A DNA stretch of 64,000 bases, taken from positions 304,759 through 368,758 of the IMG/VR virus record IMGVR_UViG_3300025162_000016; one strand, 5' to 3'. Numbering within the stretch: position 1 is the stretch's first letter; every line of letters starts with the position of its first letter. A program made the translations under genes and the position numbers. The notes beneath the pieces were generated by a model. It saw only the letters and a program-made list of their open reading frames with translations. It ran no database searches and was not told the DNA's origin. Of the stretch, positions 1 through 15,664 are shown one piece after another.

Positions 1-361
1 GTATTTCACCAATTTATTTTTATAAAAATAAATATTAACTCTAAGAATGGTATTTCACCAATTTATTTTATAAAAATAATTATTAATTCTAAAAATGGTA
101 TTTCACCAATTTATTTTTATAAAATAAATATTAACTCTAAGAATGGGTATTTCACCAATTTATTTTTATAAAATAAATATTAACTCTAAGAATGGGTATT
201 TCACCAATTTATTTTTATAAAATAATTAATAACTCTAAGGTTAGAGTTATTTTTTTTTTTAATAAATCTAAGGTTAGAATTAATCGGTGAAAATACCACT
301 TGACGGGATAACTCTAAGGTTAGAGTTAATGAGAGGAATAAATCTAAGGTTAGAGTTGATC
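1..361. repeat. Tandem ~50-bp AT-rich repeats (GTATTTCACCAATTTATTTTTATAAAA..TAACTCTAAG) grading into palindromes
   Basis: About 5 near-identical units at 1-250, then 4 copies of TAA(C/A)TCTAAGGTTAGA(G/A)TT; runs off the left edge. Confidence 0.9.
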
Positions 362-492
362 GGGATATGGGTATAGTTGTACGTACTGGGAGGGAGAGAG
401 GGAGGGAGGGGAGAGAGCGGGATATTTGGATTGGAAAGATTGCGGAAAGAATAGCTTGCTTTTTTACGAGGGAGTAGTAAGATGTAAGGAAT

Positions 493-678
493 ATGATAAC
501 TAAATATAAATGTCCTCTATGTGATGGGTCAATGACGGCGATACCGGATAAGAAGGGTGTTATGGTGAAGTGCTATAATGAACCTTGTGATCCACAATGT
601 AAGGAGAATGTCTTTGGACATGGGAAGAATGAAAAAGATGCTTGGGAAACGGCGTGTGAGAAATATCCGAAGAAATAA
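493..678 (+). CDS. Small Cys-rich (Zn-ribbon-like) phage protein
   Basis: CPLC..C..C motifs; TTGCTT/TAAGAT promoter just upstream. Confidence 0.6.
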   Translation: MITKYKCPLCDGSMTAIPDKKGVMVKCYNEPCDPQCKENVFGHGKNEKDAWETACEKYPKK

Positions 679-774
679 AACAATCTGGTTGACAAAAACA
701 AATAAATCGGTATAGTTTGAAGTGTAATAGATAAACACGGTAAACAAAAAGCAGAATCGAAAGAAACAAAAATT

Positions 775-1803
775 ATGGCGCATCGCATCTTTGAGTATGA
801 CAGGCAGCAGGGTAAGGAGCAAGCATGGCACGGTAAGACGGTAATCACGCCGGATTTGACATTGGACAACAATTGGTTGCGGGAATGGGATTTGGTTCCT
901 CGCAAGATTGCGGATTTGGAAAATAACGAAGAATTGCCTTGGGTGTATCTGCGTTGTTCGGATAATTCGGTTATTCGTGTTGGCCAGCCATATAATCCGG
1001 CGACTTTTCAGCCGGTGAACAATGCGGATTTCTTGGATATGATTAAGGCCAGCATATCGGGCACACCGCATACGGTGAGTTCAGTAGGTTCCTTGCGCAA
1101 TCGGGGCCGGGTATTTGTGAGCATTGAATTGATGGGAATGGAGAAATTCAAGGCGGCGGGCCGGGATTTTGGTGCATTCCTGAATTTCGGTAATGGACAT
1201 GATAAGTCTTCGGTACTTTGGGTCAATACCAGCAACATTTGTACGGTTTGCGACAATACGTTTTCGTGCAATCTGGTATCTGTAGAAAATAAGGTGACTA
1301 AGACGGATGATGATAACGTCCGAATCAGCCAGCGGCATACTAAGAATGTTAAATTGCGGTTGCCGGACATTGCTTCAATGGTAGATAAGGCTATTAGGGT
1401 ACAGGCGGAATTCAAGCTGGAAATGGACAAGCTAGCTGCAATAGCCGTAAGCCGAAACGGAGTTACCCAGCTCTTTGCTGGGTTCATTGGGCGCAATGTA
1501 TCGGATAAAGCCAAGGGGTTATCAACTAGGGCGGTCAACACGGTTGCCAAGTTGGATGATTTGTTTGTCAATGGGCGGGGAAACAGGGGTGAAACGTTGG
1601 CCGATGCGTTTTCAGCTACCACGGACTTTTACACTCACTTTTCTTCTGGCGGTGAAAATGTGATGCGACAAATGGTATCGAGCGATTATGGGTCTGGTCA
1701 AGCCAACAAAGCAGAATTCTGGAATCTGGTTAGGAATGGGGAATTGCGGGAAACAACCAGAGCACGGGGCGAAGAATTGTTAGTGAATACTGCTAAAGAT
1801 TAG
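775..1803 (+). CDS. DUF932 family phage/plasmid protein
   Basis: MAH..AWHG, GSLRNRGRVF, NGHD, TVCDNT motifs; TTGACA/TATAGT promoter at 689-716. Confidence 0.85.
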   Translation: MAHRIFEYDRQQGKEQAWHGKTVITPDLTLDNNWLREWDLVPRKIADLENNEELPWVYLRCSDNSVIRVGQPYNPATFQPVNNADFLDMIKASISGTPHTVSSVGSLRNRGRVFVSIELMGMEKFKAAGRDFGAFLNFGNGHDKSSVLWVNTSNICTVCDNTFSCNLVSVENKVTKTDDDNVRISQRHTKNVKLRLPDIASMVDKAIRVQAEFKLEMDKLAAIAVSRNGVTQLFAGFIGRNVSDKAKGLSTRAVNTVAKLDDLFVNGRGNRGETLADAFSATTDFYTHFSSGGENVMRQMVSSDYGSGQANKAEFWNLVRNGELRETTRARGEELLVNTAKD

Positions 1804-1816
1804 GGGTGAGGAATCA

Positions 1817-1848
1817 GGGAGGGAGCCTAAAAACCCCCTCTCTTTTTT
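1817..1848 (+). terminator. Intrinsic terminator
   Basis: AGGGAGGGAG-loop-CCCCCTCTCT followed by T tract. Confidence 0.6.
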
Positions 1849-1886
1849 AATTTGACAAAAACAAATAAATCGGTATAATTCTGATA

Positions 1887-2150
1887 ATGAGAAATAAAAC
1901 ATTATATGCAGTGATACATCGTCACGAGTATGGAGCCGGATTTTATCTTGTTCGGTGTGCTCATGTTCCTAAGAAAGAAGAAGTTATTCAACATCTTGAT
2001 ATTGATATTGCTGATACGTTGGACGAAGAAGAAATAATTATCGAAGAAATTATTTCAAAAGAAGCGGTAGAAATCCCTGAACCGGATGGCACTGAGGGAC
2101 AAGACCGAAAGAGCTATACCGATACACAAGACCGTAAAAATTATTACTGA
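1887..2150 (+). CDS. Hypothetical acidic protein (probably leaderless)
   Basis: ATG ~7 nt after TATAAT of a TTGACA/TATAAT promoter. Confidence 0.7.
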   Translation: MRNKTLYAVIHRHEYGAGFYLVRCAHVPKKEEVIQHLDIDIADTLDEEEIIIEEIISKEAVEIPEPDGTEGQDRKSYTDTQDRKNYY

Positions 2151-2324
2151 TTTCGCTTGACTTTTTTTGGTCAATCGGTATAGTGTTATCTGCTCTCTCT
2201 CGGTATAGTGCCGGGAGGGGCATTTTTTATTTATTCACCGGCAACAATTCTAAGGTTAGAGTTGATCAACTGTGGGGGGGGGATATGATTTCGTTTGACT
2301 TTTGCATGTTCTGGAATATGCAAT

Positions 2325-2440
2325 AGTGAAGTGCTGGAACAGACCAGACACTATATCACTAAAAAATGAAACTTTGTAGTTGATAATTTTGAATAAACCG
2401 GTATAATTTATTTAGTGAAGTGCTGGAACAGACCAGACAC
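2325..2440 (+). repeat. Two solitary CRISPR-repeat variants (AGTGA...TCACT form)
   Basis: 2325-2360 AGTGAAGTGCTGGAACAGACCAGACACTATATCACT and a partial copy at 2414-2440. Confidence 0.9.
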
Positions 2441-2536
2441 AATAAGACGTAAGACGAAACAAGTAATCATTGACAAAATAAAAAATATCGGTATAGTTAG
2501 TAAAGTTAAGCGATTAAACAAATAAAACAATAAAAA

Positions 2537-2989
2537 ATGAAAAAACAAAATACGGAAGTAGTTGTTGTGACGGAAACGGAAACGGTAACGGCGACAGAAG
2601 TTAAGCGTGGGCGTGGGCGGCCCAGGTTTGAAATTAAGAAGCCGGAGACAAATACGTGGACAATGAATGATGTTAAGGCATTGAACCCTGATGTTTGTGC
2701 ATTGAGTTTATATCAGCATAAGAATAGGTGGATTGCGGAAAATTGGTGTGTGGATAGTGGGGAGCGAATTCCTACGGGCGGGGTGGGAAAGCCATTGACT
2801 GTGTTTATTGCGGTTGCGGCATTGCAACGGTCTAAGGCGGCAAAGAAGGCTGCAAAGACTCGTAAGATGAACAGCAAGCTTCCGGTGGCCCCTCCGGTGG
2901 ATATGGTTGCGGTTCCGGTGACTGATACGGTTGCGGTGACTGATGCGGTTCCGGTGACTGATGCGGTGGAGAATCTGGTGACGGTATAA
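2537..2989 (+). CDS. Putative DNA-binding protein (AT-hook RGRGRPR plus wHTH-like segment)
   Basis: AT-hook motif; segment similar to C-terminus of 5396-6046; VPVTDA repeats. Confidence 0.6.
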   Translation: MKKQNTEVVVVTETETVTATEVKRGRGRPRFEIKKPETNTWTMNDVKALNPDVCALSLYQHKNRWIAENWCVDSGERIPTGGVGKPLTVFIAVAALQRSKAAKKAAKTRKMNSKLPVAPPVDMVAVPVTDTVAVTDAVPVTDAVENLVTV

Positions 2990-3074
2990 TGGTTTACAAT
3001 AAAGACGGCGAGAAAAGTAAAATATTCTTTCCGTCTTTTCTTGACTTTTTATATTATATTCATACACTATACCC

Positions 3075-3884
3075 ATGAATAAAACAAAATTAAGTTTCAC
3101 TCACGGCAATGCAAAGTTATCAAAAGACACTGCAATTCTTTCCCTTCCGGCAGGATATACATGTCCTTTTGCGAACGAGTGCCGGTCTTGTTCGGATAAA
3201 GTTACCGGCAAGATTAAAGATGGTCCACATACGCAATTCCGTTGTTATGCCACAACGGCAGAGTGTTTATTTCCTAACATACGGAGAAGTCGGTGGAATA
3301 ATTTTGAGCTTATTAAAAACGCTAAAACAACAATCGGTATGGCAAATTTGATTGAACAATCTTTGGAAGGGAAGAAAAAAATCAAATTGGTTAGATTTCA
3401 TCAAAGCGGCGATTTCTTTTCGCAAGCATATTTCGATGCTTGGCTTATGGTTGCTCAAAATCATTCTAATCTAATTTTCTATGGTTATACTAAGGCATTG
3501 CCTTATTGGGTAAAGCGATTAGAGGCAATTCCTGCTAATTTTAGGATTGTAGCCTCAAGGGGTGGGACGCATGACAATTTGATTGAAATGTTTGGGTTGC
3601 GGTCGGTGCGGGTTGTGTTATCTGAGCGAGAGGCACGCCGGAAATGGAAGCTTCAAATTGACCATGATGATTCGCATGTCTGGAATTATGACAAGGACTT
3701 TGCCATTGTCATACATGGCATCCAACCGGCGGGAACAAAGGCTAGTAAAGCATGGCAGAAAATTAAAACGCATGGCAAAGGTGGATATAAAGCCAAATAT
3801 TTTGGTGACAAGAAAGTTAAAAAGCAGAATAGTGCAGAAGGCTGGAAAGTTAAACGAGTTTTTGCCGATAAAATAGCGGCATAA
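3075..3884 (+). CDS. Gp88-like phage protein
   Basis: GNAKL, SLPAGYTCP..C, CYA, RFHQSGDF, FYGYTK motifs. Confidence 0.8.
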   Translation: MNKTKLSFTHGNAKLSKDTAILSLPAGYTCPFANECRSCSDKVTGKIKDGPHTQFRCYATTAECLFPNIRRSRWNNFELIKNAKTTIGMANLIEQSLEGKKKIKLVRFHQSGDFFSQAYFDAWLMVAQNHSNLIFYGYTKALPYWVKRLEAIPANFRIVASRGGTHDNLIEMFGLRSVRVVLSEREARRKWKLQIDHDDSHVWNYDKDFAIVIHGIQPAGTKASKAWQKIKTHGKGGYKAKYFGDKKVKKQNSAEGWKVKRVFADKIAA

Positions 3885-3935
3885 AAAACACTAAATACCG
3901 TTGACTTTAATCAAGTTAACGGTATTCTTTTATTT

Positions 3936-4124
3936 ATGAGAACAATACTTGGTCCCGGTGCAAAGTGCCGGGGATATGTTAAAGAGACTGCTAATGGTAA
4001 GGAATTGCTTTCTTCTGGCGGTACCTTACTGGGATACTATAATGAAGATACTGATCAAACACTTGAGCCAGGGGGAAACTTGTATTCCTATGGTGATTGT
4101 CTTATCGAATTGCTTGAAGATTAA
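3936..4124 (+). CDS. Hypothetical protein
   Basis: ORF directly after TTGACT/TATTCT promoter. Confidence 0.6.
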   Translation: MRTILGPGAKCRGYVKETANGKELLSSGGTLLGYYNEDTDQTLEPGGNLYSYGDCLIELLED

Positions 4125-4134
4125 TGTTAACACT

Positions 4135-4452
4135 ATGAACATGAATAATAGAGTTACCCTACAGCGAACAATATTTACTAATTGGAACACCCAAAATCAG
4201 ACTTACGGATACCGTGCGTATGATGATCAAGGGCAAACGTACGGGAATTGTTTTTCTCTTTTGCAAATGAATTTGCCGGATGATCAATTCTTTAGATTGG
4301 TTTATTCGCAGTGTGATGAAATGGTGGCGGCAATGGTAGATTCCTGTTATGAGAATGCGCTTGGAATTGAAATTGATGGGGACGATAAATCGTATGAATG
4401 GGTGAAAGAAACACTTGCAAAAGAGACAGAAATCAGTAATATGACGGTATAA
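4135..4452 (+). CDS. Hypothetical protein
   Basis: ATG at 4135 in frame with track ORF 3949-4452; follows the previous gene. Confidence 0.6.
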   Translation: MNMNNRVTLQRTIFTNWNTQNQTYGYRAYDDQGQTYGNCFSLLQMNLPDDQFFRLVYSQCDEMVAAMVDSCYENALGIEIDGDDKSYEWVKETLAKETEISNMTV

Positions 4453-4465
4453 GAATAATAAAAAC

Positions 4466-4771
4466 ATGAAAATTACATTGAATCAAGCATATCGGTTATT
4501 GGAAGATTGTTCGGCGGTTATTTGGGCGGATTATTTTCTTACATTCCCAGCATTGCAAGATGAGGATAATGAGCCAAAAATGTTTTTGTCCTTAGACTCT
4601 ACGGATGAACACGGGAAAGTGTTTCTGGTGGAATTCTATCGACAAGATAATCAAGAAGTTAAAGCGATTGGGAATTCTTTATTTCTCACGGATACAACGG
4701 GTGAAGAAATTCAACTAACATTATTGCATGCAATGAACACGGAAATTTATTTGGATGGAAAACCGGATTAA
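4466..4771 (+). CDS. Hypothetical protein
   Basis: ORF in operon order. Confidence 0.6.
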   Translation: MKITLNQAYRLLEDCSAVIWADYFLTFPALQDEDNEPKMFLSLDSTDEHGKVFLVEFYRQDNQEVKAIGNSLFLTDTTGEEIQLTLLHAMNTEIYLDGKPD

Positions 4772-4851
4772 TTAAATCTATTAGTTTCCCGTCTATAACA
4801 GGGCGGGGAACTAAGTCTTGACAAAACAGAAATGTAGTATATTATCCTAAT

Positions 4852-5064
4852 ATGATTATTAACAAAATTACCTATGGGTTTGTAGTTCAACAATGGGATA
4901 CAGAAAAAAAACAATGGGTTGGACAAGACTTTGTTGCCGGGGACGTGGTTGAATTTGAAGATGAAACGGGGGATATGATTGATGATGCGGAAATGGAAGA
5001 AATCGAGAGCAAGCCAGCATTATCATTTAAAATGGTTCAACCAGAAAACGAAGCAAAGGCTTGA
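4852..5064 (+). CDS. Hypothetical acidic protein
   Basis: ORF after TTGACA promoter. Confidence 0.65.
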   Translation: MIINKITYGFVVQQWDTEKKQWVGQDFVAGDVVEFEDETGDMIDDAEMEEIESKPALSFKMVQPENEAKA

Positions 5065-5136
5065 CAATTCCAACTAAAGCAGTATAATTTAAGTCGGTGG
5101 TTGCATGTTCTGGAATATGTGCTATATATGATAGAC

Positions 5137-5356
5137 AGTGAAGTGCTGGAACAGACCAGTTACTATATCACTTTATGTTGTTATCTTTTTTAAATTTATC
5201 CCTTGTGAATAAATCTAAGGTTAGAGTTAAAATAACTTGCATGTTTCGGGGATAAGTGCTATATATGATAGACAGTGAAGTGCTGGAACAGACCAGTCAC
5301 TAAAACACTGGGAATATGTGCTACTGTATGCGATAATGAAGTGCTGGAACAAACCG
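5137..5356 (+). repeat. Cluster of three solitary CRISPR-repeat variants
   Basis: 5137-5172, 5274-5309 and degenerate 5335-5356; first two preceded by TTGCATGTT..GTGCTATATATGATAGAC. Confidence 0.9.
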
Positions 5357-5395
5357 ACATTGAAAATAGTTGACTTTTGATGGTGTATCGGTATA

Positions 5396-6046
5396 ATGAG
5401 CAAGATGAAACAAATTGAAGTTGAATTCAAAACTAATGCCAATGGCACCGGGATGCAATTTTTCCGGCAAATTAAAAAAGGTTTTACCCCTAAAGGTAAA
5501 GCTGTATACATATATGAACGTATTCATGCGATTGGAGATAAAGAAGGGGAAACATTTGGATTTGAAGTTATTGCGCCTTCGATAAAGAAGGCAGGAACGT
5601 ATTCGTTACCTGGTGGCAAATCAATTACGTATGCTGAGGATTTTGAGGAATATCCTGGGGCGTCTAAGTTTGGAATATCAGCCTGGTCGTATCCCGCTTA
5701 TCAAGCTGGCGGGGCACGATGGAAATTTGAACAGCTTACAAAAGAACTAATAGAAATTGAAGAAATCGAAGAAACTAATAATATGATTGAAAACGATAAT
5801 GTAGATACAAATGAAGTGCCGTCTAATGTTACTAAGTCGAGGGGACGGCCCAAGAATGATCGTCCGTTGCTAAGTATTCCGTCGGGGGAGTTTAGTACAA
5901 CGGAGCTATGTAAACTAAACAATACTGATTATTCTGTGGCGGCAGTGTTTTTGAGGGACTGTGAAGCGGCTGGGACGGTAAAGCGAACCCGTACCGAGAG
6001 GCGTAATGCTAAGGGGAAGGAAACTCAATTGTTTCAAGTTGTGTAA
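5396..6046 (+). CDS. Hypothetical protein with C-terminal AT-hook (RGRPK) and wHTH-like domain
   Basis: 216-aa ORF after TTGACT/TATAAT promoter. Confidence 0.65.
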   Translation: MSKMKQIEVEFKTNANGTGMQFFRQIKKGFTPKGKAVYIYERIHAIGDKEGETFGFEVIAPSIKKAGTYSLPGGKSITYAEDFEEYPGASKFGISAWSYPAYQAGGARWKFEQLTKELIEIEEIEETNNMIENDNVDTNEVPSNVTKSRGRPKNDRPLLSIPSGEFSTTELCKLNNTDYSVAAVFLRDCEAAGTVKRTRTERRNAKGKETQLFQVV

Positions 6047-6048
6047 AT

Positions 6049-6372
6049 ATGAAATCGAATAAGCCTATCCCTGAAACATATACGAACCGTGTAGCTCAAT
6101 TTAACAAGACTGAGCAACGATTGCCTAATGTTCCTGTTAAAGGCAAGGAGCCGGGTTCTACGCTCACGGATACGACCAAAGAAAACCCTTATATGATTGC
6201 TCGTCTTAAAGTTCTTAATGACTATAAAGAGGGTAGGCGTATTGAAGTGTTGGCAATGGAAAGAGATAATAGAATTGATCACCGGCATTATGAGGAATTC
6301 GTTACCGATGTTCTTAGGGTAGCCGGGGATATTCCTTCTCTGGCTATCCGAAATCGAATCAAAGGAATCTAA
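6049..6372 (+). CDS. Hypothetical protein
   Basis: Coupled to previous gene; terminator at 6395-6424. Confidence 0.6.
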   Translation: MKSNKPIPETYTNRVAQFNKTEQRLPNVPVKGKEPGSTLTDTTKENPYMIARLKVLNDYKEGRRIEVLAMERDNRIDHRHYEEFVTDVLRVAGDIPSLAIRNRIKGI

Positions 6373-6431: not shown

Positions 6432-7020
6432 AGTGAATTACTGGAACAGACCAGTCACTATCAACTCTAAGATTAGAATTAAAACGAATTGCATTTTTTT
6501 GAAATTTCTAGTGAATTACTGGAACAGACCAGTCACTAAAACACTACCGGAGAAGGAGTAATAATTTTTTATCACCCTTCTCCGGCATATATGTAGTGAC
6601 GTGCTGGGATATATCAGTCACTAAAACACTCAGACTGTACGGTAAAGGTATCAGCACTTTCCCAACTAAAATGATCTACGATTGCTTTACCGGCAGCATC
6701 ATCTTGATCAAATGCCAATTTGGGTTCAAAATCCGCTTGTTCCGCTTTATTCATAGCAAATTTATAATGATACCCATTATCGTAATCATCTTCGGTACAG
6801 ATTAATTTACAAAAGTAAAAGTCTGGTTCTCCATTACTGTTAATCCCGGCTACCATCATCTTTAAGTCAAGCATAAAGTCAAGCATATTTTTGTTTTTAA
6901 TCGGTTAATTGTTTTTTTACTGTGATATGATTATACGGATTTACGGATAGGAGTCAACTAATAAATGTATATATTTAGTGACGTGCTGGAACAGACCAGT
7001 CTCTATATCTCTATATCACT
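6432..7020 (+). repeat. Four degenerate solitary CRISPR-repeat variants
   Basis: Starts at 6432, 6510, 6595, 6977 (AGTGAATTACTGGAACAGACCAGTCACT / AGTGACGTGCTGG forms). Confidence 0.85.
6614..6886 (-). CDS. Hypothetical acidic protein
   Basis: 90-aa ORF; minus-strand TTGACT/TATAAT promoter at ~6930-6958. Confidence 0.6.
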   Translation of the reverse strand: MLDFMLDLKMMVAGINSNGEPDFYFCKLICTEDDYDNGYHYKFAMNKAEQADFEPKLAFDQDDAAGKAIVDHFSWESADTFTVQSECFSD

Positions 7021-7031
7021 AAATTACTAAA

Positions 7032-7217
7032 TTATTCTTCTTCTAATTTTTCTAGGCGATATTGGCGCAAAGCTTCATTGGTTTGCATTTCGTCTATAAT
7101 ATCGCATTCTTGGGGTTGAAATAATCCCATTATACCGACATTTTCGGCATCTATTGATCCGATGATTTCACCGAATTCATTAACTTCTACGTTTTTATTC
7201 TTTCTCGGTCTGCCCAT
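7032..7217 (-). CDS. Small protein with N-terminal AT-hook (GRPRK)
   Basis: 61-aa ORF with A-rich leader. Confidence 0.6.
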   Translation of the reverse strand: MGRPRKNKNVEVNEFGEIIGSIDAENVGIMGLFQPQECDIIDEMQTNEALRQYRLEKLEEE

Positions 7218-7531
7218 AATTTTGTTTTTGGTTTAATTGTTTTTCAACTATGATTTCACCAATTTATTGATTTCGGGATGAAAGTCAACAATTTTCTTCA
7301 ATTATTTTTCAGATTTCACCGATTTCACCGAATCTATTTTTTCCTATTTCACCGGCGATTTTCATTATACCGATTTTTTCAGAAAGTCAAGCTCCGGTTT
7401 TTATTAAATCTAAGGTTAGAATTGATCCCGTGGGGTGACTTCTAGTATGCCATAATGGCAGGAACCCGCTTTGCCGTGAAATAGTTTTGATATTTCGTTG
7501 ACTTTTTTTATGGTATCGGTATGATGGCGAC

Positions 7532-7858
7532 ATGATTAAAAACAATAAAAACCTTATCACGGTGGCCTTCAATCCAACTTGTTCGGTTGGACAAGATGGT
7601 GATTGGGCCGAGGGCAATAGCAAATTGGCGGCGATAGAACAGGCTTACGAAAACATATCGGGGACTCATGATTCAACCGAATCGCTTGCTAAGCTAAGCT
7701 ATGAAATTGTTAATCTTTGGGAATTACCGGATGTAAGTTATAATGCCTTTTCCCGTTTGCATGCACAATGGCGTCTTGCTCGTCATAATGGATGGACGAG
7801 CGATGAGGCCGATAAAATAATGATGGAAGAACTCGTTCGCCGGGAAGAAGAGGGTTGA
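7532..7858 (+). CDS. Hypothetical protein
   Basis: ATG just after TTGACT/TATGAT promoter. Confidence 0.6.
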   Translation: MIKNNKNLITVAFNPTCSVGQDGDWAEGNSKLAAIEQAYENISGTHDSTESLAKLSYEIVNLWELPDVSYNAFSRLHAQWRLARHNGWTSDEADKIMMEELVRREEEG

Positions 7859-8473: not shown

Positions 8474-8725
8474 ATGAAATATAGATTCACAATGCCGACA
8501 CAAGCACAATGTGATGCGTTATGTATTAAACGAGATGGATTGTATGGTCGTACTCAAATGTGGTTATTGGGAGCAGCAACGGCAGTATCTTGGGTAACTA
8601 AGATCAATTTGATGTTGTCTTTTCCGGGAAATTCATTTATCATGGAAACCAGTAGCGAAATCGTGGTAGATGGTATTACCGAACGATTAGAATCTTATGG
8701 GTTCATTCGGGAAGAAATGAAATAA
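8474..8725 (+). CDS. Hypothetical protein
   Basis: ORF after TTGACA/TATGAT promoter. Confidence 0.55.
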   Translation: MKYRFTMPTQAQCDALCIKRDGLYGRTQMWLLGAATAVSWVTKINLMLSFPGNSFIMETSSEIVVDGITERLESYGFIREEMK

Positions 8726-8730
8726 GAATT

Positions 8731-8985
8731 TGATTTCACCAATTTCCCAGTCGATTTCACCAATCGACTGGGAGACAGTTTTCTCCTTTTTTTCACCGCT
8801 CATTCAATATTCCGGTATTTCTCAAAAAAACAAGCAATTTTATTAACTCTAACCTTAGAGTTGATCGGCAAGTGTGGGAGAGACTGTGAGACTGTGAGAG
8901 TGGGAGAGAAATTGCCGGTGGCTAAAATAGAGTAAAATAAGTCTTGCAATACCGGGAATAATCCGTAGAATGTTGACAATGAAAC
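8731..8985 (+). promoter_or_regulatory. Repeated hairpin-palindrome-promoter cassette (copies at ~10061-10305 and ~10860-11056)
   Basis: Near-identical ~250-bp blocks ending TTGCAATACCGGGAATAATCCGTAGAATG upstream of unrelated genes. Confidence 0.85.
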
Positions 8986-9377: not shown

Positions 9378-9440
9378 CTTCCCGGCAATAACTCATATAC
9401 TACTCATAGTTAATTAAACAAATAAAGCTAAACAAATATT

Positions 9441-10047: not shown

Positions 10048-10298
10048 CTATATCACTAGTGGATTTCACCAATTTCCCAGTCGATTTCACCAATCGACTG
10101 GGAGACATTTTTCTCCTTTTTTTCACCGCTCATTCAATATTCCGGTTTTTCAACAAATAGCAAGCAATTTTATTAACTCTAACCTTAGAGTTGATCGGCT
10201 ACTGTGAGAGACTGAGAGCGGGGGGGAAAGTTGTCGGTGCTGGAAAATAGAGTAAAATAAGTCTTGCAATACCGGGAATAATCCGTAGAATGTTGACA

Positions 10299-10637
10299 AT
10301 GAAAAAACAAATACTTCCTCGCACTGGAAATTATTACGGTATGTCCATTGTCCCGACGTATGGGACGGGCACAACTACATGGGTCGAAGGAGAAATGATG
10401 AACACTGATTACGGTCAATTCCGTAGAAGGGGGATAGTGATTCATGCGGGCACACAGGAACTTGTAATGGTAAGATTAGATGTTCCTGATACTTTTTTCA
10501 GTATCCCAGCCACCACAAGAGCAGAACATGGATATGTCACCACGAATGCGAAGGGTGAATTTGAATTCCGCCCGCATACTACCCAAACCGTTTCCCCAGC
10601 ACAATTTCGGAAAGATACTAAACACGCATACAAATAA
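10299..10637 (+). CDS. Hypothetical phage protein
   Basis: PDTFFSIPA motif; cassette promoter. Confidence 0.65.
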   Translation: MKKQILPRTGNYYGMSIVPTYGTGTTTWVEGEMMNTDYGQFRRRGIVIHAGTQELVMVRLDVPDTFFSIPATTRAEHGYVTTNAKGEFEFRPHTTQTVSPAQFRKDTKHAYK

Positions 10638-11074
10638 TATTTGACTTTCCAACAATAACCTATAGAATATCAACAATGAAACAAACATTTGAACAATGGC
10701 TGGATAGAGTAGATGCTGAAATTCAAGCGATAGCGGGAGTGTCTTTACTCGATCTTCCCGATTGTTGCTATCAAGATTGGTACAACGATGAAATATCAGT
10801 GAAAAGGGCAGCGAAAAAAGCGATTCGTACTGCCCAAGAATAAAACCTAGATAAAACAAATTTCCCGCTTGATTTCACCAGTCAAGTGGGAAACTCTTTT
10901 TTCCTCGTGTTCCAATCATTTCGGTTTTTCTCAAAAAAGCAAGCAATTTTATTAACTCTAACCTTAGAGTTGATCGGCTACTGTGAGAGAGAAATTGCCG
11001 GTGGCTAAAATAGAGTAAAATAAGTCTTGCAATACCGGGAATAATCCGTAGAATGTCCATAGTTAAATAAATAT

Positions 11075-11266
11075 ATGCCATACGACGATAACTTCGGTAA
11101 TTGGGAACTGGACGGCGAGGATAGAGACGAAACAATGTCGTTCTATCGCCACTGCCAGAATAATTCAGTGGAGAAAGTGTGCTCCATTTGCGGTCGTCAT
11201 GTAATGTTGATGCCCCAATACGACAAGTGTGATGCGTGTTGCCGTCGCATTGAAAACGGTTATTAG
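11075..11266 (+). CDS. Small Zn-finger-like protein
   Basis: CSICG..CDAC; terminator at 11288-11311. Confidence 0.65.
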   Translation: MPYDDNFGNWELDGEDRDETMSFYRHCQNNSVEKVCSICGRHVMLMPQYDKCDACCRRIENGY

Positions 11267-11515
11267 TCTTAATCGCCCACAAATCATGCTCCCTTCGGGG
11301 AGCCTTTTTTTTGTACTTTTCACCGAACAATCAGCAATTTTATTAACTCTAACCTTAGAGTTGATCACTCGTCCTGGTACAGTATAATTGCCGATATATC
11401 GGCGATTAATTGGCGTATGGCATCATCTATGCTTAGTTGCCGGGGGAAAGCCGGAAAGAGTAAAATAAGTTGCGAATATTCTTGCAAATTAACCGGCAAC
11501 CCGTAAGATTAGGAC

Positions 11516-12142
11516 ATGCTAAATAAAACTACTGATACGGGAGCGGTGCTAGACTTCACTGCCCTTGTCAGCTTACTGGACGGTAACAAGTCGGCCCGTT
11601 TCATTTCTTTGCTCTATCGGACAAAGGAAAGCGGGGAAGTGGCTCGTCATACGCTGCTGTTAAACGTCAAGCGGGAGCGGTGCTTGAAAGTTGACCTGGC
11701 TAGCCTTACTGCCTTGCGCCCTAGCCTTACGGGCATTGAAGCGCAAGCCTGTGATGAATTGGTGGCCAGCATTACGGAGTCTTTGACAACGGGCAGCAAC
11801 AAGCTTTATACAAAGAAGGGTTATTACACTGCCGAGGGTAACGGTAACGTCCAGGTGTCGGTAAAGGACATTGCCTACGTGCGAGGGTATTCCATCGGCA
11901 AAGAGGTTATTACGGAAGGCACCTATAAGAAAGTTAAGTCTAGTGACAAGACTATCGCCAAAAACAAGCTTCGCAAGGGGCTTAAGAATACCAGGGTTCG
12001 GGAATTCGTTATCACGCCAGCAAATTTCATTATGGCTCGTCATAATGGCAAATCCATTGAAATTAATGCACTGCGAACCGATTTCAATTCTTTGGCGGAA
12101 TTGCCCCCAATAACAATCGCCAGTCCTGCCGTTGCAGTGTAA
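11516..12142 (+). CDS. Hypothetical protein
   Basis: 208-aa ORF after TTGCAA/TAAGAT promoter. Confidence 0.7.
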   Translation: MLNKTTDTGAVLDFTALVSLLDGNKSARFISLLYRTKESGEVARHTLLLNVKRERCLKVDLASLTALRPSLTGIEAQACDELVASITESLTTGSNKLYTKKGYYTAEGNGNVQVSVKDIAYVRGYSIGKEVITEGTYKKVKSSDKTIAKNKLRKGLKNTRVREFVITPANFIMARHNGKSIEINALRTDFNSLAELPPITIASPAVAV

Positions 12143-12413
12143 GACGGGTTAACAGGGAGCGTTCCAGCATTGGGCTGGACGCTCTTTTTATTTGCTTTAT
12201 TTCGGTAACGTTATCGGAATTAGACCAGGATAGGTACACGTACAATGTACCGAAAACCGTACGAAAAGTCAATCGAAATTTCAATTTATTTGAAATTAAA
12301 TCTAAGGTTAGAGTTGATCGACAAGAGCGAGCGAGAAATTGCCGGTGAAATAGGTTAAAATAAATTGTAGAAAGTATTTGACTTCAAACCGGAAAACCGG
12401 TATCGTGTTGACA

Positions 12414-12704
12414 ATGAAATCAATACCTATGGAACAGATAACGATAGAAGACAGGAATCTCCGTATCGGTGATGTCGTGCGACTCCTATGTACTGGAGAA
12501 GTAGTAGATACTGGATTTAATCAGCTTGTCGTCATCAACAAGACGGAAGAAGCAATTACCTTTTTTCGTCCTTACGTGAGCTTAGGGGACTTTACATATA
12601 CTGGAGGGGTAATACCCTATATCGGAATTGAGCGGTTCGACGCTCCGTTCCGGGGAGCCGTTTACATACTCCTGGATAATATCTATCGGGAAAAAGCAAT
12701 TTAA
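12414..12704 (+). CDS. Hypothetical protein
   Basis: ATG after promoter cassette duplicated at 12745-12897. Confidence 0.6.
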   Translation: MKSIPMEQITIEDRNLRIGDVVRLLCTGEVVDTGFNQLVVINKTEEAITFFRPYVSLGDFTYTGGVIPYIGIERFDAPFRGAVYILLDNIYREKAI

Positions 12705-12938
12705 TCATTGGAGCCGCTCATAAAGATGGGCGGCTCCAATAGTTTATTTGAAATTAACTCTAAGGTTAGAGTTGATCGACAAGAGCGAGCGAGAAATTGC
12801 CGGTGAAATAGGTTAAAATAAATTGTAGGAAGTATTTGACTTTAAACCGGAAAACCGGTATCGTGTTGACAATGAAATCAATACCTACGGAACAGAAAAC
12901 GATAGTAGACATTTTATAATAATTAACTAAATACATAT

Positions 12939-13409
12939 ATGGGATACAACACGCAGTTTACTGGTCAGTTCAATCTAAACAAACCTCTTTCCGAAAAGGA
13001 TAAAGAGTTTCTAACCACGCTTTCGGAGACACGCCGGATGGCTCGTAAGGTTGATGCAAAGTATGGTATTGAAGGGGAATTCTATGTAGATGGGGCCGGG
13101 ATATTTGGTCAGGATAAGGATGAAACCATTCTTGACAATAACTGCCCTCCCAAAACTCAACCTGGATATTGGTGCCAATGGGTGCCAAACGATGATGGAA
13201 CGGCTATTATCTGGGATTGCAATGAGAAGTTCTATGAATACATTGAATGGATTAACTATTTGATTAAGAATCTTATTGAACCTCGGGGATATTCACTTAC
13301 GGGAGATGTTGAATGGCAGGGAGATGAACCGGATGATTTTGGGATTATCTCTATCAAAGACAACACGGTGCGGATTGGTCAAGGTGTGCGGAGCTATATC
13401 TACAGTTGA
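12939..13409 (+). CDS. Conserved phage hypothetical protein
   Basis: MGY.T.F.G.F, PPKTQPGYWCQW, EKFY.Y.EW, W.G.E motifs. Confidence 0.75.
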   Translation: MGYNTQFTGQFNLNKPLSEKDKEFLTTLSETRRMARKVDAKYGIEGEFYVDGAGIFGQDKDETILDNNCPPKTQPGYWCQWVPNDDGTAIIWDCNEKFYEYIEWINYLIKNLIEPRGYSLTGDVEWQGDEPDDFGIISIKDNTVRIGQGVRSYIYS

Positions 13410-13757
13410 TCCTTTTTAGTCTGCCGCCGAAAGTTTGACGGCAGACTTGACATTTTAGAATAATTCTGATAGTATCAGAAAAGAGGAATTTGATCTGATT
13501 TCAGATTCTGACTCTTTTCCCAACGAATTTACACTAGTAATTGTGGAAATTAACGTAGTTTAACGGCCCACTTTTTCACGGTCAGGATAGTTTGTCGGCC
13601 CACTTTTTCACACCCACCCTAAAAACGTGGGCTTTTTTTGTACATCAATTCCATTAACTCTAACCTTAGAGTTGATCGCTTATGCTGACAACGCCGGTGT
13701 CTAAAATATTTTCAAAAGGTGTTTGACTTCAAACCGGGAAAACGGTATCGTGTTGAC

Positions 13758-13964
13758 ATGAACAAAATCTACGGAAGTCGAACAGAAAAATTGCAACGGT
13801 ATCAAGCAGCCGTCAAGACAATGACGCAAGAACAAGTCGATGCCTGTGCCTGGTTGTTCGGTGGGTATGGTTCTGCCTGGACCCCAGCGAATTGTGCGGC
13901 TCGGTATCAAGAAATTCTAGATCAAGAAATTTCAGAACGAGGGGAAGATAAAACGGGAAATTAA
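13758..13964 (+). CDS. Hypothetical protein
   Basis: ATG right after cassette promoter. Confidence 0.55.
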   Translation: MNKIYGSRTEKLQRYQAAVKTMTQEQVDACAWLFGGYGSAWTPANCAARYQEILDQEISERGEDKTGN

Positions 13965-14008
13965 AAATAATTCTTGCTTTTTTCAATATAACCAGTAGAA
14001 TAACAACC

Positions 14009-14446
14009 ATGAAACTTACATTAACAGTATCGGAGTTAACCGCAATCGTCCGGCACCATTACGCTTTACCGGAACTAACAATCGAAATCGAGGGACTGAA
14101 CGCTATACCCGTTTCCCATGCTATCACGGCAGACAATTTGATTGCCGACCTGCACCACCGCCCATACCCGGCCACGAACGTCTTCAATCCCGCCATCACG
14201 GCAGACAATTTGATTGCCGATCTGCACCACACTAATTGCTTTGATGTTAACAACAATATTGCGCTCGATCATAAGATCGCCGCAATAAAAATCTTGCGGG
14301 AAGTGGTTTGTAACTCCGCCCCCAATACGCAATGCGGACTGGCACAGGCTAAGTGGGCGATAGAGGACTGGCATAGGTTCATTAAATACGTCCGCCAGAA
14401 TGGATTTCCCAAAATGGGAACAGATGACAATAAGAATTGGAGTTAG
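14009..14446 (+). CDS. Hypothetical protein with ribosomal L7/L12 C-terminal-like motif
   Basis: KIAAIKILRE..GLAQAK..IE; internal duplication AITADNLIADLHH. Confidence 0.6.
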   Translation: MKLTLTVSELTAIVRHHYALPELTIEIEGLNAIPVSHAITADNLIADLHHRPYPATNVFNPAITADNLIADLHHTNCFDVNNNIALDHKIAAIKILREVVCNSAPNTQCGLAQAKWAIEDWHRFIKYVRQNGFPKMGTDDNKNWS

Positions 14447-14751
14447 TACATCTTGAATACACGGAGCACTTGGCGGTGCTCTTTGTCCTTCCCTCGCTTG
14501 ACTGGTAATCTTGCGAGGGACTTTTTTTGTTGATTTCACCAGAAAAAAACTAAGTTTCACCAGATAGTTTTTTCCTCCTCCTCCTTCCTCCACTTTCACC
14601 ATTCTTCCGGTATTTCACCGAAAAGCAAGCAAATTTATTAACTCTAACCTTAGAGTTGATCGCTTATGCTGACAACGCCGGTGTCTAAAATAATTTGAAT
14701 TATTTTGATATTCCAATTGACATTCAAATACTTTCTGATACTCTCTTGAAC

Positions 14752-14991
14752 ATGAACATAAACACAGTCCGAATCGCACGTAAATTAAATAAAATCAGTG
14801 TCGCAACTTCTGCCCGCCTTATGCGAAGGCTGGGAAGGGTCAACCCCAAAGCAAATAATTGGGAAGCTTTTTGTGCCTTGCGGGCATCTATCATGCGGGA
14901 AGTTAAACCTCAAATTCAAGCCGCAAGGGATGCCGAGGAATGGATGGAATCACGGCACCGCACGACAAAGCGCCGGTACATAGACGCATAA
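14752..14991 (+). CDS. Hypothetical basic protein
   Basis: ATG after TTGACA/GATACT promoter; terminator at ~15005-15033. Confidence 0.55.
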   Translation: MNINTVRIARKLNKISVATSARLMRRLGRVNPKANNWEAFCALRASIMREVKPQIQAARDAEEWMESRHRTTKRRYIDA

Positions 14992-15150
14992 GCCACCCAA
15001 AACAGTGCTCCGCAAGTGCGGGGCCTTTTTTTTGTACATCAATTCCATTAACTCTAATCTTAGAATTAATCGCCCTCCTGGCGAAGCCGGTGTCTAAAAT
15101 AATTGAAATTATCTCTTGCAATTCATGTCATAATTAGTATATTGTTAAAC

Positions 15151-15396
15151 ATGAACGCTATGTTTACTGAAAAACAAAAACAATTAATTGCCGACCTTGC
15201 GATTGACCTTGCGCCCGAAATGGCGCAAATAGAGGCGAAGCCGGAAACAACCCAGCACCATTATGCGGATTATGGTGCCTTGCTCTCACGGTTAGCTAAG
15301 GGCAATCGTACGGTGGCGATGGTCCTGGCGCACGCTTTCATCAAAGCCGGAGCACACCCAGTGGGTGTAGCCAATGGGCTAAAAATCTTTGTATAG
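15151..15396 (+). CDS. Hypothetical protein
   Basis: ATG after promoter; terminator at 15411-15438. Confidence 0.6.
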   Translation: MNAMFTEKQKQLIADLAIDLAPEMAQIEAKPETTQHHYADYGALLSRLAKGNRTVAMVLAHAFIKAGAHPVGVANGLKIFV

Positions 15397-15664
15397 TTTA
15401 TCCCCACGCATGCCCACCCTAAAAAGGTGGGCTTTTTTATGTACATTTCACCGATAAGTTAGAGTTATTCCACCAATCTATTAATTTCACCAAAACATCA
15501 ATGATTTCGCCAAAATTAACTCTAACCTTAGAGTTAATAAACCTTGCTTCTGTAAACATCGCATTTATAGGTATTTACAGATATTTTGCAAAATTAGAGT
15601 TATTCCCTTGCTTTATTTTGCGAAACGTATAATCTCTGAATAGTTCAAATTAAATAATCAAAAT

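What the first reader, a model, noticed from the sequence alone, without database searches (positions are those of the whole stretch)
229..15538. ~18 copies of an 11+2+11 palindrome confined to the first 15.5 kb
Seen: consensus ATTAACTCTAA-(GG/CC)-TTAGAGTTGAT near 230, 263, 309, 339, 2245, 5210, 6462, 7404, 8843, 10172, 10952, 11343, 12297, 12754, 13654, 14638, 15048 and 15516. All are intergenic, usually 60-110 bp upstream of a promoter, and I saw none after 16 kb. The core dinucleotide comes in blocks (mostly GG to 7.4 kb, CC 8.8-11.3 kb, GG 12.3-12.8 kb, mostly CC after). Inference: operators for a phage dimeric regulator, replication or DNA-entry signals, or recombination sites. The arm-2 bp-arm geometry resembles serine-recombinase sites that could delimit gene cassettes.
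Basis: partly seen in the sequence, partly recalled or inferred. Interest (0 to 1): 0.65.

Follow-up and report, generated by a model that had tools for sequence, protein, structure and literature searches.

The report
Conserved palindrome between phage early-gene cassettes
A 24-base palindrome sits in most long gaps between the small early genes of a giant T4-like phage and six of its uncultured relatives; it looks like the docking site of a still unidentified DNA-binding protein that controls or organises these gene cassettes.

Summary
All 18 copies lie at the stated coordinates. None lies elsewhere in the 368,758-bp phage genome, and shuffles expect zero.

The window is the end of a T4-like jumbo phage. 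The palindromes sit in a 15-kb block of small, mostly orphan early genes. The usual order is gene, GC-rich terminator, direct repeats of TTTCACC, palindrome, sigma-70-like promoter, then an ATG 6-9 nt after the -10.

The same palindrome family, ATTAAnTCTAA-SS-TTAGAnTTAAT, recurs 5-10 times per contig in six independent relatives. It holds orthologous positions there.

Across 63 sites the variable arm positions show no base-pair covariation. The RNA hairpin is weak, and separate terminators exist. This argues for a double-stranded protein-binding site rather than a hairpin.

The GG/CC centre has no fixed polarity relative to the promoters, and it is GC in one relative. The only serine recombinases are three distant IS607-type transposases, so the recombinase reading has no support.

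My best reading (about 0.5) is a dispersed operator or upstream site of an early-gene regulon. The binder is not identified; the candidates are a conserved AT-hook/winged-helix-like protein and a 208-aa protein with no fold match.

The closest described analogue is the PeSL cassette of T4-type phages. The reads test for rearrangements could not be run.

The parts
1..239 (+). Tandem array of 4.9 x 49 bp. Each unit holds one TTTCACC box and one isolated half-site (ATTAACTCTAAG). It lies at the left edge of the region, after about 0.8 kb of non-coding DNA.
228..360 (.). Cluster of four palindromes (228-251, 261-284, 307-330, 337-360; centre GG) upstream of the first operon (493-1803). The first is followed by T11; the last overlaps a weak -35.
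2243..2266 (.). Palindrome with centre GG, after terminator 2194-2220. It lies 204 bp upstream of the promoter (-35 at 2470) of the AT-hook/winged-helix-like gene 2537-2989.
5208..5231 (.). Palindrome with centre GG, flanked by solitary copies of the 36-bp CRISPR-like repeat.
6460..6483 (.). Palindrome whose outer bases are reversed (centre GA on the + strand). It lies between convergent genes (6049-6372 on + and 6614-6886 on -), with no promoter next to it.
7403..7426 (.). Degenerate palindrome with centre GG in a divergent gap. Four intergenic TTTCACC boxes (7254-7353) lie on its left, with a fifth at 7166 inside gene 7032-7217, and promoter 7498-7525 lies on its right.
8842..8865 (.). Canonical palindrome, centre CC, in the module terminator 8743-8775, boxes 8734-8797, palindrome, promoter 8944-8971.
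10172..10195 (.). Canonical palindrome, centre CC. The module is a paralogue of the one at 8842 (about 90% identity over about 250 bp).
10951..10974 (.). Canonical palindrome, centre CC.
11342..11365 (.). Canonical palindrome, centre CC, upstream of the conserved 208-aa gene. It is orthologous to palindromes upstream of the same gene in five other phage contigs.
12295..12318 (.). Palindrome, centre GG. The module is 96% identical to the one at 12753.
12753..12776 (.). Palindrome, centre GG, with the same outer bases as the CC copies.
13653..13676 (.). Canonical palindrome, centre CC.
14637..14660 (.). Canonical palindrome, centre CC, preceded by four TTTCACC boxes (14534-14619).
15047..15070 (.). 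Degenerate palindrome, centre TC.
15515..15538 (.). Last palindrome, centre CC. Boxes lie at 15446 and 15485, and isolated half-sites in the opposite sense at 15459 and 15594.
8734..8797 (+). Example of a TTTCACC box cluster. One box forms the loop of the terminator hairpin 8743-8775. Similar clusters lie at 7254-7353, 10064-10127, 14534-14619 and 15446-15491.
12378..12416 (+). Example of a cassette promoter (TTGACT, 17 nt, TATCGT) with the ATG 7 nt after the -10. The same geometry occurs at 7498, 8944, 10264, 11482, 13723, 14717 and 15116.
2537..2989 (+). Candidate binder: a 150-aa protein with an RGRGRP AT-hook, a probable winged helix and a long basic helix. Homologues are present in 4 of the 5 relatives checked for it.
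11516..12142 (+). The best-conserved protein of the region (208 aa, 62-74% identity in all palindrome-bearing contigs). It has no family, no solved relative and no fold match. It co-occurs with the palindrome.
8474..8725 (+). 83-aa protein found in all five palindrome-bearing relatives checked for it and in none of the contigs without the palindrome. Function unknown.

Best explanation
The palindrome is a double-stranded DNA binding site for a sequence-specific protein that binds as a dimer or a higher oligomer. Each 11-bp arm has two conserved blocks, ATTAA and TCTAA.

It belongs to a composite, repeated intergenic cassette that separates the small transcription units of the early, accessory ('hyperplastic') region. 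The phage is a T4-like jumbo phage, and six related phage contigs carry the same element. The cassette order is terminator, an array of TTTCACC boxes, the palindrome, an A-rich stretch, a sigma-70-like promoter and a probably leaderless start codon.

One protein bound at all these sites would regulate the whole set of early cassettes together. It might shut them off after the early phase, or boost or insulate their promoters. The isolated half-sites of the 49-bp array and the four clustered copies at the left edge would form a high-affinity cluster in front of the first operon.

Shown: the sites, their confinement to one region, their architecture, their conservation in relatives and the lack of pairing covariation.

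Inferred: that a protein binds, that it is phage-encoded, and that the effect is on transcription.
For: 1. Non-random and confined: 18 copies against 0 expected, all within 15.3 kb of a 369-kb genome.

2. The 24-mer is far better conserved than its flanks among paralogous modules. Median identity is 0.875, against a 0.34 matched fraction in the 60-bp flanks (shuffled flanks: 0.22).

3. Phylogenetic footprint. The pattern TCTA[AG]NN[CT]TAGA occurs 10, 7, 9, 10, 9 and 5 times in six independent contigs, where about 0.1 is expected per contig. Their proteins are only 40-85% identical to the window's. In the orthologous gap upstream of the 208-aa gene, the only conserved blocks are the palindrome, the boxes, the -35/-10 and the ATG.

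4. Sequence is conserved, not pairing. In 63 sites the variable arm positions form Watson-Crick pairs no more often than if the arms were independent (position 7: 21 observed against 26.3 +/- 2.2; position 11: 31 against 36.1 +/- 2.7).

5. A hairpin role is unlikely. The RNA hairpin is weak (-9.3 kcal/mol; -3.1 for the copy at 7403), 17 of 18 copies lack a T-run, and separate GC-rich terminators lie just upstream.

6. The copies of one genome share that genome's own variant: TCTAG..CTAGA in L149, AGTCTAAGCTTAGACT in L154. This is expected if all sites track one binder.

7. Half-sites occur alone as well as in pairs, as with the monovalent and bivalent C1 operators of phage P1.

8. A conserved early protein with an AT-hook and a probable winged helix is encoded behind one of the palindromes in the window, in L149 and in L150.
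Against: - No binder is identified. The winged-helix assignment rests on a pLDDT-60 model and Z scores of 3.0-3.6, which are not significant. The 208-aa protein has no recognisable fold.
- The distance to the promoter is variable and not in helical phase: the centre lies 91-125 nt before the inferred start in the window, and the gap ranges from about 75 to about 330 nt in orthologues. This is unusual for a classical repressor or activator.
- The palindrome occurs in 62-79% of long intergenic gaps whatever the gene orientation. At least one is a true convergent junction with no promoter (6460-6483).
- Many promoters of the region have no palindrome.
- Genome-specific variants could equally result from gene conversion among copies.
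- The gene calls of the relatives are automatic and miss leaderless genes, so the junction classes are approximate.
Confidence: 0.5

Rival explanations
1. Cassette linker for recombination. The palindrome, alone or with the rest of the repeated intergenic module, serves mainly as a patch of identity. It could also be the target of a nuclease or recombinase. Through it, self-contained promoter-gene-terminator cassettes are deleted, duplicated, inverted or exchanged between co-infecting phages, as proposed for PeSL elements of T4-type phages. Because the sequence is its own reverse complement, any two copies can pair in either orientation.
For: - The phage is T4-like, and the region is a block of orphan genes that differs strongly between relatives.
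- Near-identical modules flank unrelated genes (90% and 96% identity).
- The centre is GG or CC far more often than GC or CG (9 Watson-Crick centres against 29.4 +/- 3.3 expected). This fits flips by antiparallel gene conversion or hairpin-mediated template switching.
- The only inverted gene block of the window (6614-7217) lies between two palindromes. The block 5396-6372 is inverted relative to L149 and is also bounded by palindromes.
- Palindromes occur at junctions of every orientation.
- PeSL papers report mini-circles and short-homology exchange (PMC2839356, PMC4122927).
Against: - The two assemblies of this phage are 99.995-100% identical across the region, so no variant is seen.
- There is no resolvase/invertase-type or tyrosine recombinase. 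The serine enzymes are IS607 transposases with unrelated ends.
- Once gap length is controlled, palindromes are not enriched at strand switches (p = 0.26 to 1.0).
- Some lineage-specific genes lie inside a unit without a palindrome of their own (1887-2150).
- Recombination alone does not explain why a specific 24-28 bp sequence is kept across phages whose proteins differ by 30-60%.
Confidence: 0.2
2. Architectural, partition-like or replication element. Arrays of direct repeats (TTTCACC boxes and half-sites) plus inverted repeats resemble iteron/operator sets, centromere-like sites and the dispersed sites of silencers that spread or bridge. Examples are KorB on plasmid RK2, omega on pSM19035 and SopB on phage N15 (named from my own knowledge). 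On this reading the sites load a protein that compacts, silences or insulates the whole 15-kb domain, or they mark an origin.
For: - The 5 x 49-bp array with half-sites and four adjacent palindromes lies at a 1.3-kb non-coding stretch, where gene direction and GC skew change sign.
- In all relatives, directional arrays of up to eight boxes point towards the palindrome.
- Position relative to promoters is loose, and sites occur at all kinds of junction.
Against: - No ParB, Rep or related protein was looked for systematically, and none turned up in the region's Pfam or PHROG scans.
- GC skew here follows gene direction, so it does not mark an origin.
- Fourteen or more modules per phage is far more than an origin or a centromere needs.
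Confidence: 0.1
3. Structure-forming element. The palindrome acts as an RNA hairpin (back-up terminator, processing site, 3' stabiliser or nut-like signal) or as a DNA cruciform extruded by the negative supercoiling behind strong promoters.
For: - Canonical copies fold into a 10-bp stem with a 4-nt loop (z about -3.5 to -4.0).
- The first copy is followed by T11.
- Copies lie just after terminators, where read-through RNA would contain them.
- TTTCACC boxes often form the loops of terminator hairpins.
Against: - There is no compensatory change at any variable stem position in 63 sites.
- About a third of the copies carry mismatches. The copy at 7403 folds no better than shuffles.
- The stem is AT-rich, and 17 of 18 copies lack a T-run.
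- Proper terminators precede the sites.
- Sites also occur in divergent gaps, where no transcript should cross them.
Confidence: 0.07
4. A selfish or neutral short repeat, like REP or miniature inverted-repeat elements. It would spread by duplication of modules or by a transposase, for example the IS200-like tnpA remnant at 17146-17433, and have no function for the phage.
For: - It is confined to one region and often embedded in duplicated modules.
- An IS200-family Y1 transposase fragment lies 1.6 kb from the last copy.
- The phage carries several insertion sequences.
Against: - The same sequence holds orthologous positions in phages whose flanks no longer align.
- Flanks decay while the 24-mer stays.
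- The tnpA fragment has a 96%-identical copy in the complete relative G006, which has no palindromes.
Confidence: 0.05

Closest known systems
PeSL (promoter-early stem-loop) cassettes of T4-type phages (Arbiol et al. 2010, PMC2839356; Comeau et al. 2014, PMC4122927)
   Same: - The phage superfamily matches: the major capsid protein is gp23-like.
- The setting matches: blocks of small orphan early genes.
- The intergenic module is repeated in the same way, with a stem-loop upstream of a strong sigma-70-like promoter.
- The stem-loop sequence is phage-specific yet conserved.
- Nearly identical modules flank unrelated genes.
   Different: - In PeSLs the stem-loop is the GC-rich terminator, placed just upstream of the promoter. 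Here a separate terminator exists.
- The conserved element here is an AT-rich 24-28 bp palindrome that is a poor terminator.
- It lies 16-330 nt from the -35, comes with arrays of TTTCACC boxes, and has a sequence conserved between phages.
- PeSL genes have Shine-Dalgarno sites. These genes appear leaderless.
C1 repressor operators of phage P1 (annotated in NC_005856)
   Same: - Many operators of one repressor are dispersed over early operons.
- Single (monovalent) sites and overlapping inverted pairs (bivalent) both occur.
- The operator ATTGCTCTAATAAATT shares ATT..CTCTAA with the half-site ATTAACTCTAA.
   Different: - No C1 homologue exists in this phage or its relatives (best tblastn E 0.036-0.94, scattered).
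- P1 operators overlap or abut promoters.
- The half-site match is short and may be chance.
Dispersed palindromic sites of plasmid global regulators (KorB on RK2, omega on pSM19035); from my own knowledge, not tested here
   Same: - Palindromes or arrays of short repeats lie upstream of many promoters.
- The distances to the promoter vary, and one protein acts at all of the sites.
   Different: - No ParB-like or ribbon-helix-helix protein was identified here.
- The site sequence and length differ.
- This is a lytic-type T4-like phage, not a plasmid.
Crossover sites of serine invertases and resolvases (hix, gix, res site I); from my own knowledge
   Same: The geometry is arm, 2-bp centre, arm, about 24-26 bp in all, with a non-palindromic centre in most copies.
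   Different: - No invertase or resolvase gene is present; there are only IS607-type transposases.
- The centre polarity is random relative to the module, and the centre is symmetric in one relative.
- There are too many sites, and no enhancer or accessory-site layout.
REP/BIME extragenic palindromes of bacteria; from my own knowledge
   Same: They are short imperfect palindromes in intergenic DNA after genes, present in many copies.
   Different: - REPs are transcribed, are spread over the whole genome and are linked to RAYT transposases.
- These sites are confined to one regulon-like block.
- They show no pairing covariation and are conserved at orthologous positions.

Membership tests
PeSL cassette (T4-type phages) | Located in a hyperplastic region of a T4-like phage | tested here: met
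   The major capsid protein matches phrog_138 and gp23-type capsids of T4-like phages. The region's genes are mostly without family and vary between relatives.
PeSL cassette (T4-type phages) | Strong sigma-70-like early promoter inside the repeated module | tested here: inconclusive
   Consensus matches are present and conserved in orthologues. Promoter activity was not measurable.
PeSL cassette (T4-type phages) | The conserved stem-loop is an effective terminator placed just upstream of the promoter | tested here: not met
   The palindrome is AT-rich (-9.3 kcal/mol or weaker) and has no T-run in 17 of 18 copies. Separate GC-rich terminators lie upstream of it.
PeSL cassette (T4-type phages) | Indels and exchanges between close relatives map to the modules; mini-circles form | tested here: inconclusive
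   Gene-content differences and one inversion relative to L149 end in gaps that carry a palindrome. However, most long gaps carry one anyway.
Operator of a dimeric transcription factor | Dyad-symmetric site whose half-sites are conserved as sequence, without pairing covariation | tested here: met
   63-site matrix and covariation test.
Operator of a dimeric transcription factor | Defined position relative to the regulated promoter | tested here: not met
   The centre lies 91-125 nt before the inferred start in the window. The palindrome-to-promoter gap is about 75 to 330 nt in orthologues, and some sites have no promoter.
Operator of a dimeric transcription factor | A cognate DNA-binding protein | tested here: inconclusive
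   Candidates come from co-occurrence only. The AT-hook/winged-helix-like protein gives weak structural matches. The 208-aa protein has no fold match.
Serine-recombinase crossover site | A resolvase or invertase encoded with the sites | tested here: not met
   There are three Resolvase-domain genes, all IS607-type with an N-terminal helix-turn-helix and an overlapping tnpB. They lie at genome 11, 76 and 181 kb.
Serine-recombinase crossover site | An asymmetric 2-bp core that sets a consistent polarity | tested here: not met
   GG and CC are mixed relative to module orientation in every genome. The centre is GC in 8 of 9 sites of L154.
Serine-recombinase crossover site | Rearrangement junctions at the core | not testable with these tools
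The two assemblies are identical.
Integron attC / tyrosine-recombinase cassette site | An integrase of the tyrosine recombinase family | tested here: not met
   PF00589 has no match in the genome, while the control genomes all match.
Intrinsic terminator | GC-rich stem followed by a T-run | tested here: not met
   Only 228-251 has a T-run. The terminator scan picks other hairpins, not the palindromes.
P1 C1 operator | Match to the 17-bp operator and presence of a C1-type repressor | tested here: not met
   There is a partial half-site resemblance only, and no C1 homologue.

The most novel reading that the evidence does not exclude
The palindrome, the directional TTTCACC arrays and the isolated half-sites are the cis-sites of a dedicated machine encoded by this clade of T4-like jumbo phages. 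That machine could include the 208-aa protein, which has no known fold. It acts on DNA at cassette boundaries in one of two ways: as an integron-like system that excises, inverts and captures promoter-gene-terminator cassettes, or as a clamp or bridging silencer that switches off the whole early domain from dispersed loading sites.
Probability: 0.12. Interest if true: 0.85.

Novelty: new variant of a known kind. Interest (0 to 1): 0.6.

Why it matters
How large phages that lack the T4 AsiA/MotA pair switch off their early genes is largely unknown. So is the way their blocks of orphan 'accessory' genes are assembled and exchanged.

This finding supplies a sharply defined cis-element that is conserved across seven uncultured jumbo-phage contigs. 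It comes with companion motifs and a short list of co-occurring proteins. Together these make the question testable by pull-down, reporter and transcript-mapping experiments.

If the element proves to be a regulon operator, it defines a new early-gene control circuit. If it proves to be a recombination site, it would give PeSL-type cassette shuffling a specific target.

Tried and rejected
- **Near-identical DNA in cultured phages:** none found.
- **Exact-motif scans:** in IMG/VR and JGI metagenomes, only this phage holds many copies. Its own contig and a 99.995-100% identical fragment account for them; single hits elsewhere are at chance level and in unrelated contexts.
- **Relatives found through the GP88-like gene, the 1003-aa neighbour and the capsid gene:** these either lacked the region or lacked the motif.
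- **Closest complete relative (G006):** it has no such palindrome. Its homologous early region carries a different one, ATAGATTTAAATCTAT, inside the promoter spacer. The half-site resemblance (AAATCTA) is noted but unproven.
- **Rfam:** no RNA family at the palindromes.
- **IS607 link:** the ends of the three copies carry no half-sites.
- **P1 C1 link:** no homologue.
- **Strand switches:** enrichment of palindromes there disappears once gap length is controlled.
- **TTTCACC box as a MotA-box-like promoter element:** no consistent -10 follows it.
- **208-aa protein:** no Pfam or PHROG family, no PDB sequence match, no Foldseek match, and only helical-hairpin matches by VIA-align.
- **Atlas look-ups for two candidate proteins:** nothing usable.
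- **AsiA and MotA families:** not detected, but the search had no positive control.
- **Whole-record search of the Logan, ENA and JGI relatives:** not possible, because the records are not held.
- **Searches not used:** the large representative-protein search and the complex predictor.
- **Constraints:** no other genetic code was needed, and no contig looked human.

Full report
**1.

The window is the last 64 kb of a 368,758-bp virus record with a 7,102-bp terminal repeat. The 18-bp core with up to two mismatches occurs 18 times in the whole genome. All copies lie between window positions 229 and 15538, and the reversed control pattern gives none.

Three details were missed.
- The inner TCTAA-NN-TTAGA never varies. 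Position 3/16 of the 18-mer varies in eight copies, always on one arm only.
- The outer bases ATT...GAT keep the same orientation whether the centre is GG or CC. What flips is therefore the centre, not the site or the module.
- The first 239 bases are a 49-bp tandem repeat in which each unit carries a single half-site.

**2. The setting**

The major capsid protein is of the T4 gp23 type. Its best cultured relatives are a Microcystis phage and Flavobacterium phages at about 52% identity. This is a T4-like jumbo phage.

The 15-kb region holds about 30 small genes, nearly all on the + strand and nearly all without a family. The exceptions are DUF932, GP88, DUF6927 and a weak DUF5419 match. Its G+C content is 0.38-0.45, against about 0.35 for the genome.

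Sigma-70-like promoters with a 16-17-nt spacer are dense, and GC-rich intrinsic terminators are present. The regular module reads as follows:
- gene
- terminator
- one to five direct copies of TTTCACC
- palindrome
- 40-70 nt
- GCCGGTGnCTAAAATA
- -35 and -10
- ATG 6-9 nt after the -10

TTTCACC occurs 21 times here against 13 in the other 346 kb. The centre of the palindrome lies 91-125 nt before the inferred start, and the spacing is not in helical phase. Several promoters of the region have no palindrome. One palindrome (6460-6483) lies between convergent genes.

**3. Relatives**

Exact-motif scans of IMG/VR and of the JGI metagenomes found many copies only in this phage. They were in its own contig and in an 84-kb fragment that is 99.995-100% identical. 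The closest complete relative, G006 (capsid 73% identical), has no such site. Its homologous early region (DUF932 53% identical) carries another palindrome, ATAGATTTAAATCTAT, between the -35 and -10 of about twenty promoters. There too an ATG follows about 7 nt after the -10.

The decisive material came from protein searches with two proteins that the family scans left open, followed by fetching the encoding contigs. The loose pattern TCTA[AG]NN[CT]TAGA is expected about 0.1 times per contig. It occurs:

| Contig | Copies |
|---|---|
| L149 | 10 |
| L150 | 7 |
| L154 | 9 |
| L155 | 10 |
| L156 | 9 |
| L160 | 5 |

It does not occur in L151/L152, L153, L157 or L159. L145 has a single hit, and G006 has three, about the chance number for its length.

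The 63-site matrix from the window and five of these contigs (L160 came later) gives (CG)ATTAAnTCTAA-SS-TTAGAnTTAAT(CG). The TTTCACC arrays of up to eight copies always point towards the palindrome. They recur in all these contigs, often as the loop of the preceding terminator or directly abutting the palindrome or an isolated half-site.

I aligned the gap upstream of the 208-aa gene from six phages. The palindrome, the boxes, the promoter hexamers and the ATG are the only conserved blocks. The distance from palindrome to promoter ranges from about 75 to about 330 nt.

**4. Hairpin or protein site**

In the 63 sites the variable arm positions pair no more often than expected if the two arms varied independently within each genome.

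| Arm position | Watson-Crick pairs observed | Expected if arms independent |
|---|---|---|
| 7 | 21 | 26.3 +/- 2.2 |
| 8 | 48 | 48.0 |
| 10 | 42 | 40.8 |
| 11 | 31 | 36.1 +/- 2.7 |

The canonical RNA hairpin is worth only -9.3 kcal/mol, and the copy at 7403 folds no better than shuffled sequence. Only the first copy has a T-run, and true terminators lie upstream. Rfam finds nothing there. Selection therefore acts on the sequence of each half-site. That is the signature of a double-stranded protein-binding site.

Each genome has its own variant shared by its copies: TCTAG..CTAGA in L149, and AGTCTAAGCTTAGACT without the outer ATTAA in L154. This fits sites that track one binder, but it also fits gene conversion among copies.

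**5. The centre**

The centre is GG or CC far more often than GC or CG: 9 self-complementary centres against 29.4 +/- 3.3 expected. It has no consistent polarity relative to the boxes and the promoter. In L154 it is GC in eight of nine sites.

The simplest account is a mutational one and is my inference. The centre flips either by template switching in the hairpin or by short-patch conversion from a copy aligned antiparallel, which a palindrome allows. This needs no site-specific enzyme. It also explains why the outer bases stay put.

**6. Recombinases**

The genome has three Resolvase-domain genes. All three have an N-terminal helix-turn-helix and a 4-nt overlap with a tnpB gene. They are IS607-type insertion sequences at 11, 76 and 181 kb, and their ends carry no half-site. 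No tyrosine recombinase was found.

An IS200-type tnpA fragment lies at 17146-17433. It has a 96%-identical copy in G006, which has no palindromes.

I did not try another route.

**7. Position relative to genes**

Using the automatic gene calls of the relatives, palindromes lie in tandem, divergent and convergent gaps. They look enriched at strand switches, but this vanishes once gap length is controlled. For gaps of at least 180 bp the counts are 15 of 19 against 30 of 48 (p = 0.26).

Some 'convergent' cases are gene-calling errors, because leaderless genes are missed. The one at 6460 is real. In the window, the only gene block on the - strand lies between two palindromes. The block 5396-6372 is inverted relative to L149. 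This is compatible with exchange at the modules but does not show it.

**8. Who binds**

Gene co-occurrence leaves three candidates.
- **The 208-aa protein (11516-12142).** It is present at 62-74% identity in all seven palindrome-bearing contigs. It is absent or only 40-43% identical in the contigs without the palindrome.
- **The 83-aa protein (8474-8725).** It is present in all five palindrome-bearing relatives checked for it and in none of the contigs without the palindrome.
- **The 150-aa protein (2537-2989).** It has homologues in four of the five relatives checked. The one lacking it within the 20 kb read is L154, whose sites also lack the ATTAA block.

The 208-aa family has 111 clusters but no annotation and no solved relative. 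Its confident model (pLDDT 82) has no fold match.

The 150-aa family has an invariant RGRP AT-hook followed by a region that looks like a winged helix. The model is weak (pLDDT 60; 73-80 in the core). The best structural neighbours of that core are winged-helix regulators, but only at Z 3.0-3.6, which is not significant. A palindrome lies upstream of this gene in the window, in L149 and in L150.

None of this identifies the binder. The P1 C1 operators, read from the annotated record, resemble the half-site, but no C1 homologue exists.

**9. Verdict**

The element is real and confined to one region, and it is conserved in a clade of uncultured T4-like jumbo phages.

It works most like a dispersed operator or upstream site of a regulon of early accessory cassettes (confidence about 0.5). 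Its loose spacing and its presence at promoter-less junctions keep two rivals alive: a boundary or recombination role like that proposed for PeSL elements (0.2) and an architectural role (0.1).

It is not a member of the PeSL class in the strict sense, because the conserved stem-loop is not the terminator. It is not a serine-recombinase site by any feature I could test.

I rate it a new variant of a known kind, with interest 0.6.

Noticed in passing
window 26821-27272 and 28312-29123; genome 9154-9590 and 297378-298322; solitary copies at window 2331, 2420, 5143, 5280, 6438, 6516, 6983, 10018, 25702, 45788: A 36-bp repeat (GGTGAAGTGCTGGAACAGACCAGTTACTATATCACC) forms four CRISPR-like arrays with 70-77-bp spacing and unique spacers. 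One array lies next to a Cas3-like helicase (genome 298524-300800) and a TnpB gene. About 17 solitary copies exist. Eight of them lie in the palindrome region, some flanking palindromes, in a variant with ends AGTGA...TCACT.
   Followed up: partly
window 7498-7534, 8944-8984, 10264-10304, 11482-11518, 12378-12416, 13723-13763, 14717-14754, 15116-15153; also L149, L150, L154, L155 (alignment A3): In many cassettes the start codon lies 6-9 nt after the -10 hexamer, so the early messages are probably leaderless. The same geometry is conserved in the orthologous promoter of five phages and in the relative G006. Other genes have A-rich leaders without a Shine-Dalgarno site.
   Followed up: partly
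window 32365-45150: Dozens of small tandem genes encode proteins made of four-residue SQVx repeats, starting MNNKLINDQ... and ending ...ELHE. This gives the 12-bp periodicity over 13 kb.
   Followed up: partly
window 20136-20529 and 56001-56071: The phage encodes a full-length tmRNA (93.8 bits) and a tRNA.
   Followed up: no
genome 11050-12890, 76127-77946, 180451-182345 (loci L147, L146, L148): Three IS607-like insertion sequences, each a serine-recombinase tnpA overlapping a tnpB by 4 nt, sit in the phage genome. A further TnpB gene lies at L013:7795-8988.
   Followed up: yes
window 17146-17804 (- strand): An IS200-type Y1 transposase lacks its first 30 or so domain residues and is fused in an ATGA overlap to a 124-aa gene. 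The pair recurs at 90-96% protein identity in relative G006 at 110515-111266.
   Followed up: partly
window 16295-16323: A run of 29 G lies in a low-complexity, G-rich non-coding stretch just right of the region. The second assembly of this phage (G001) ends about 60 bp beyond it.
   Followed up: no
G006 (IMGVR_UViG_3300031884_000002) 21281-38627, loci L127/L144: The closest complete relative has its own palindrome, ATAGATTTAAATCTAT, placed between the -35 TTGACA and the -10 of about twenty early promoters on both strands. Its half-site AAATCTA resembles that of the window's palindrome with the arms swapped.
   Followed up: partly
L153 2274, 2321, 6131, 8514: A more distant relative without the palindrome has four copies of another 6+2+6 palindrome, TGTTACnnGTAACA.
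   Followed up: no
window 22948-23560 and 50947-51741: Two arrays of 90-bp tandem repeats (6.7 and 8.8 copies, 78-79% matches) are probably coding repeats.
   Followed up: no
genome 1-7102 = 361657-368758 (window 56899-64000): The record ends in an exact 7,102-bp direct repeat of its start. For a T4-like phage this may be assembly overlap of a circularly permuted genome rather than fixed ends.
   Followed up: partly
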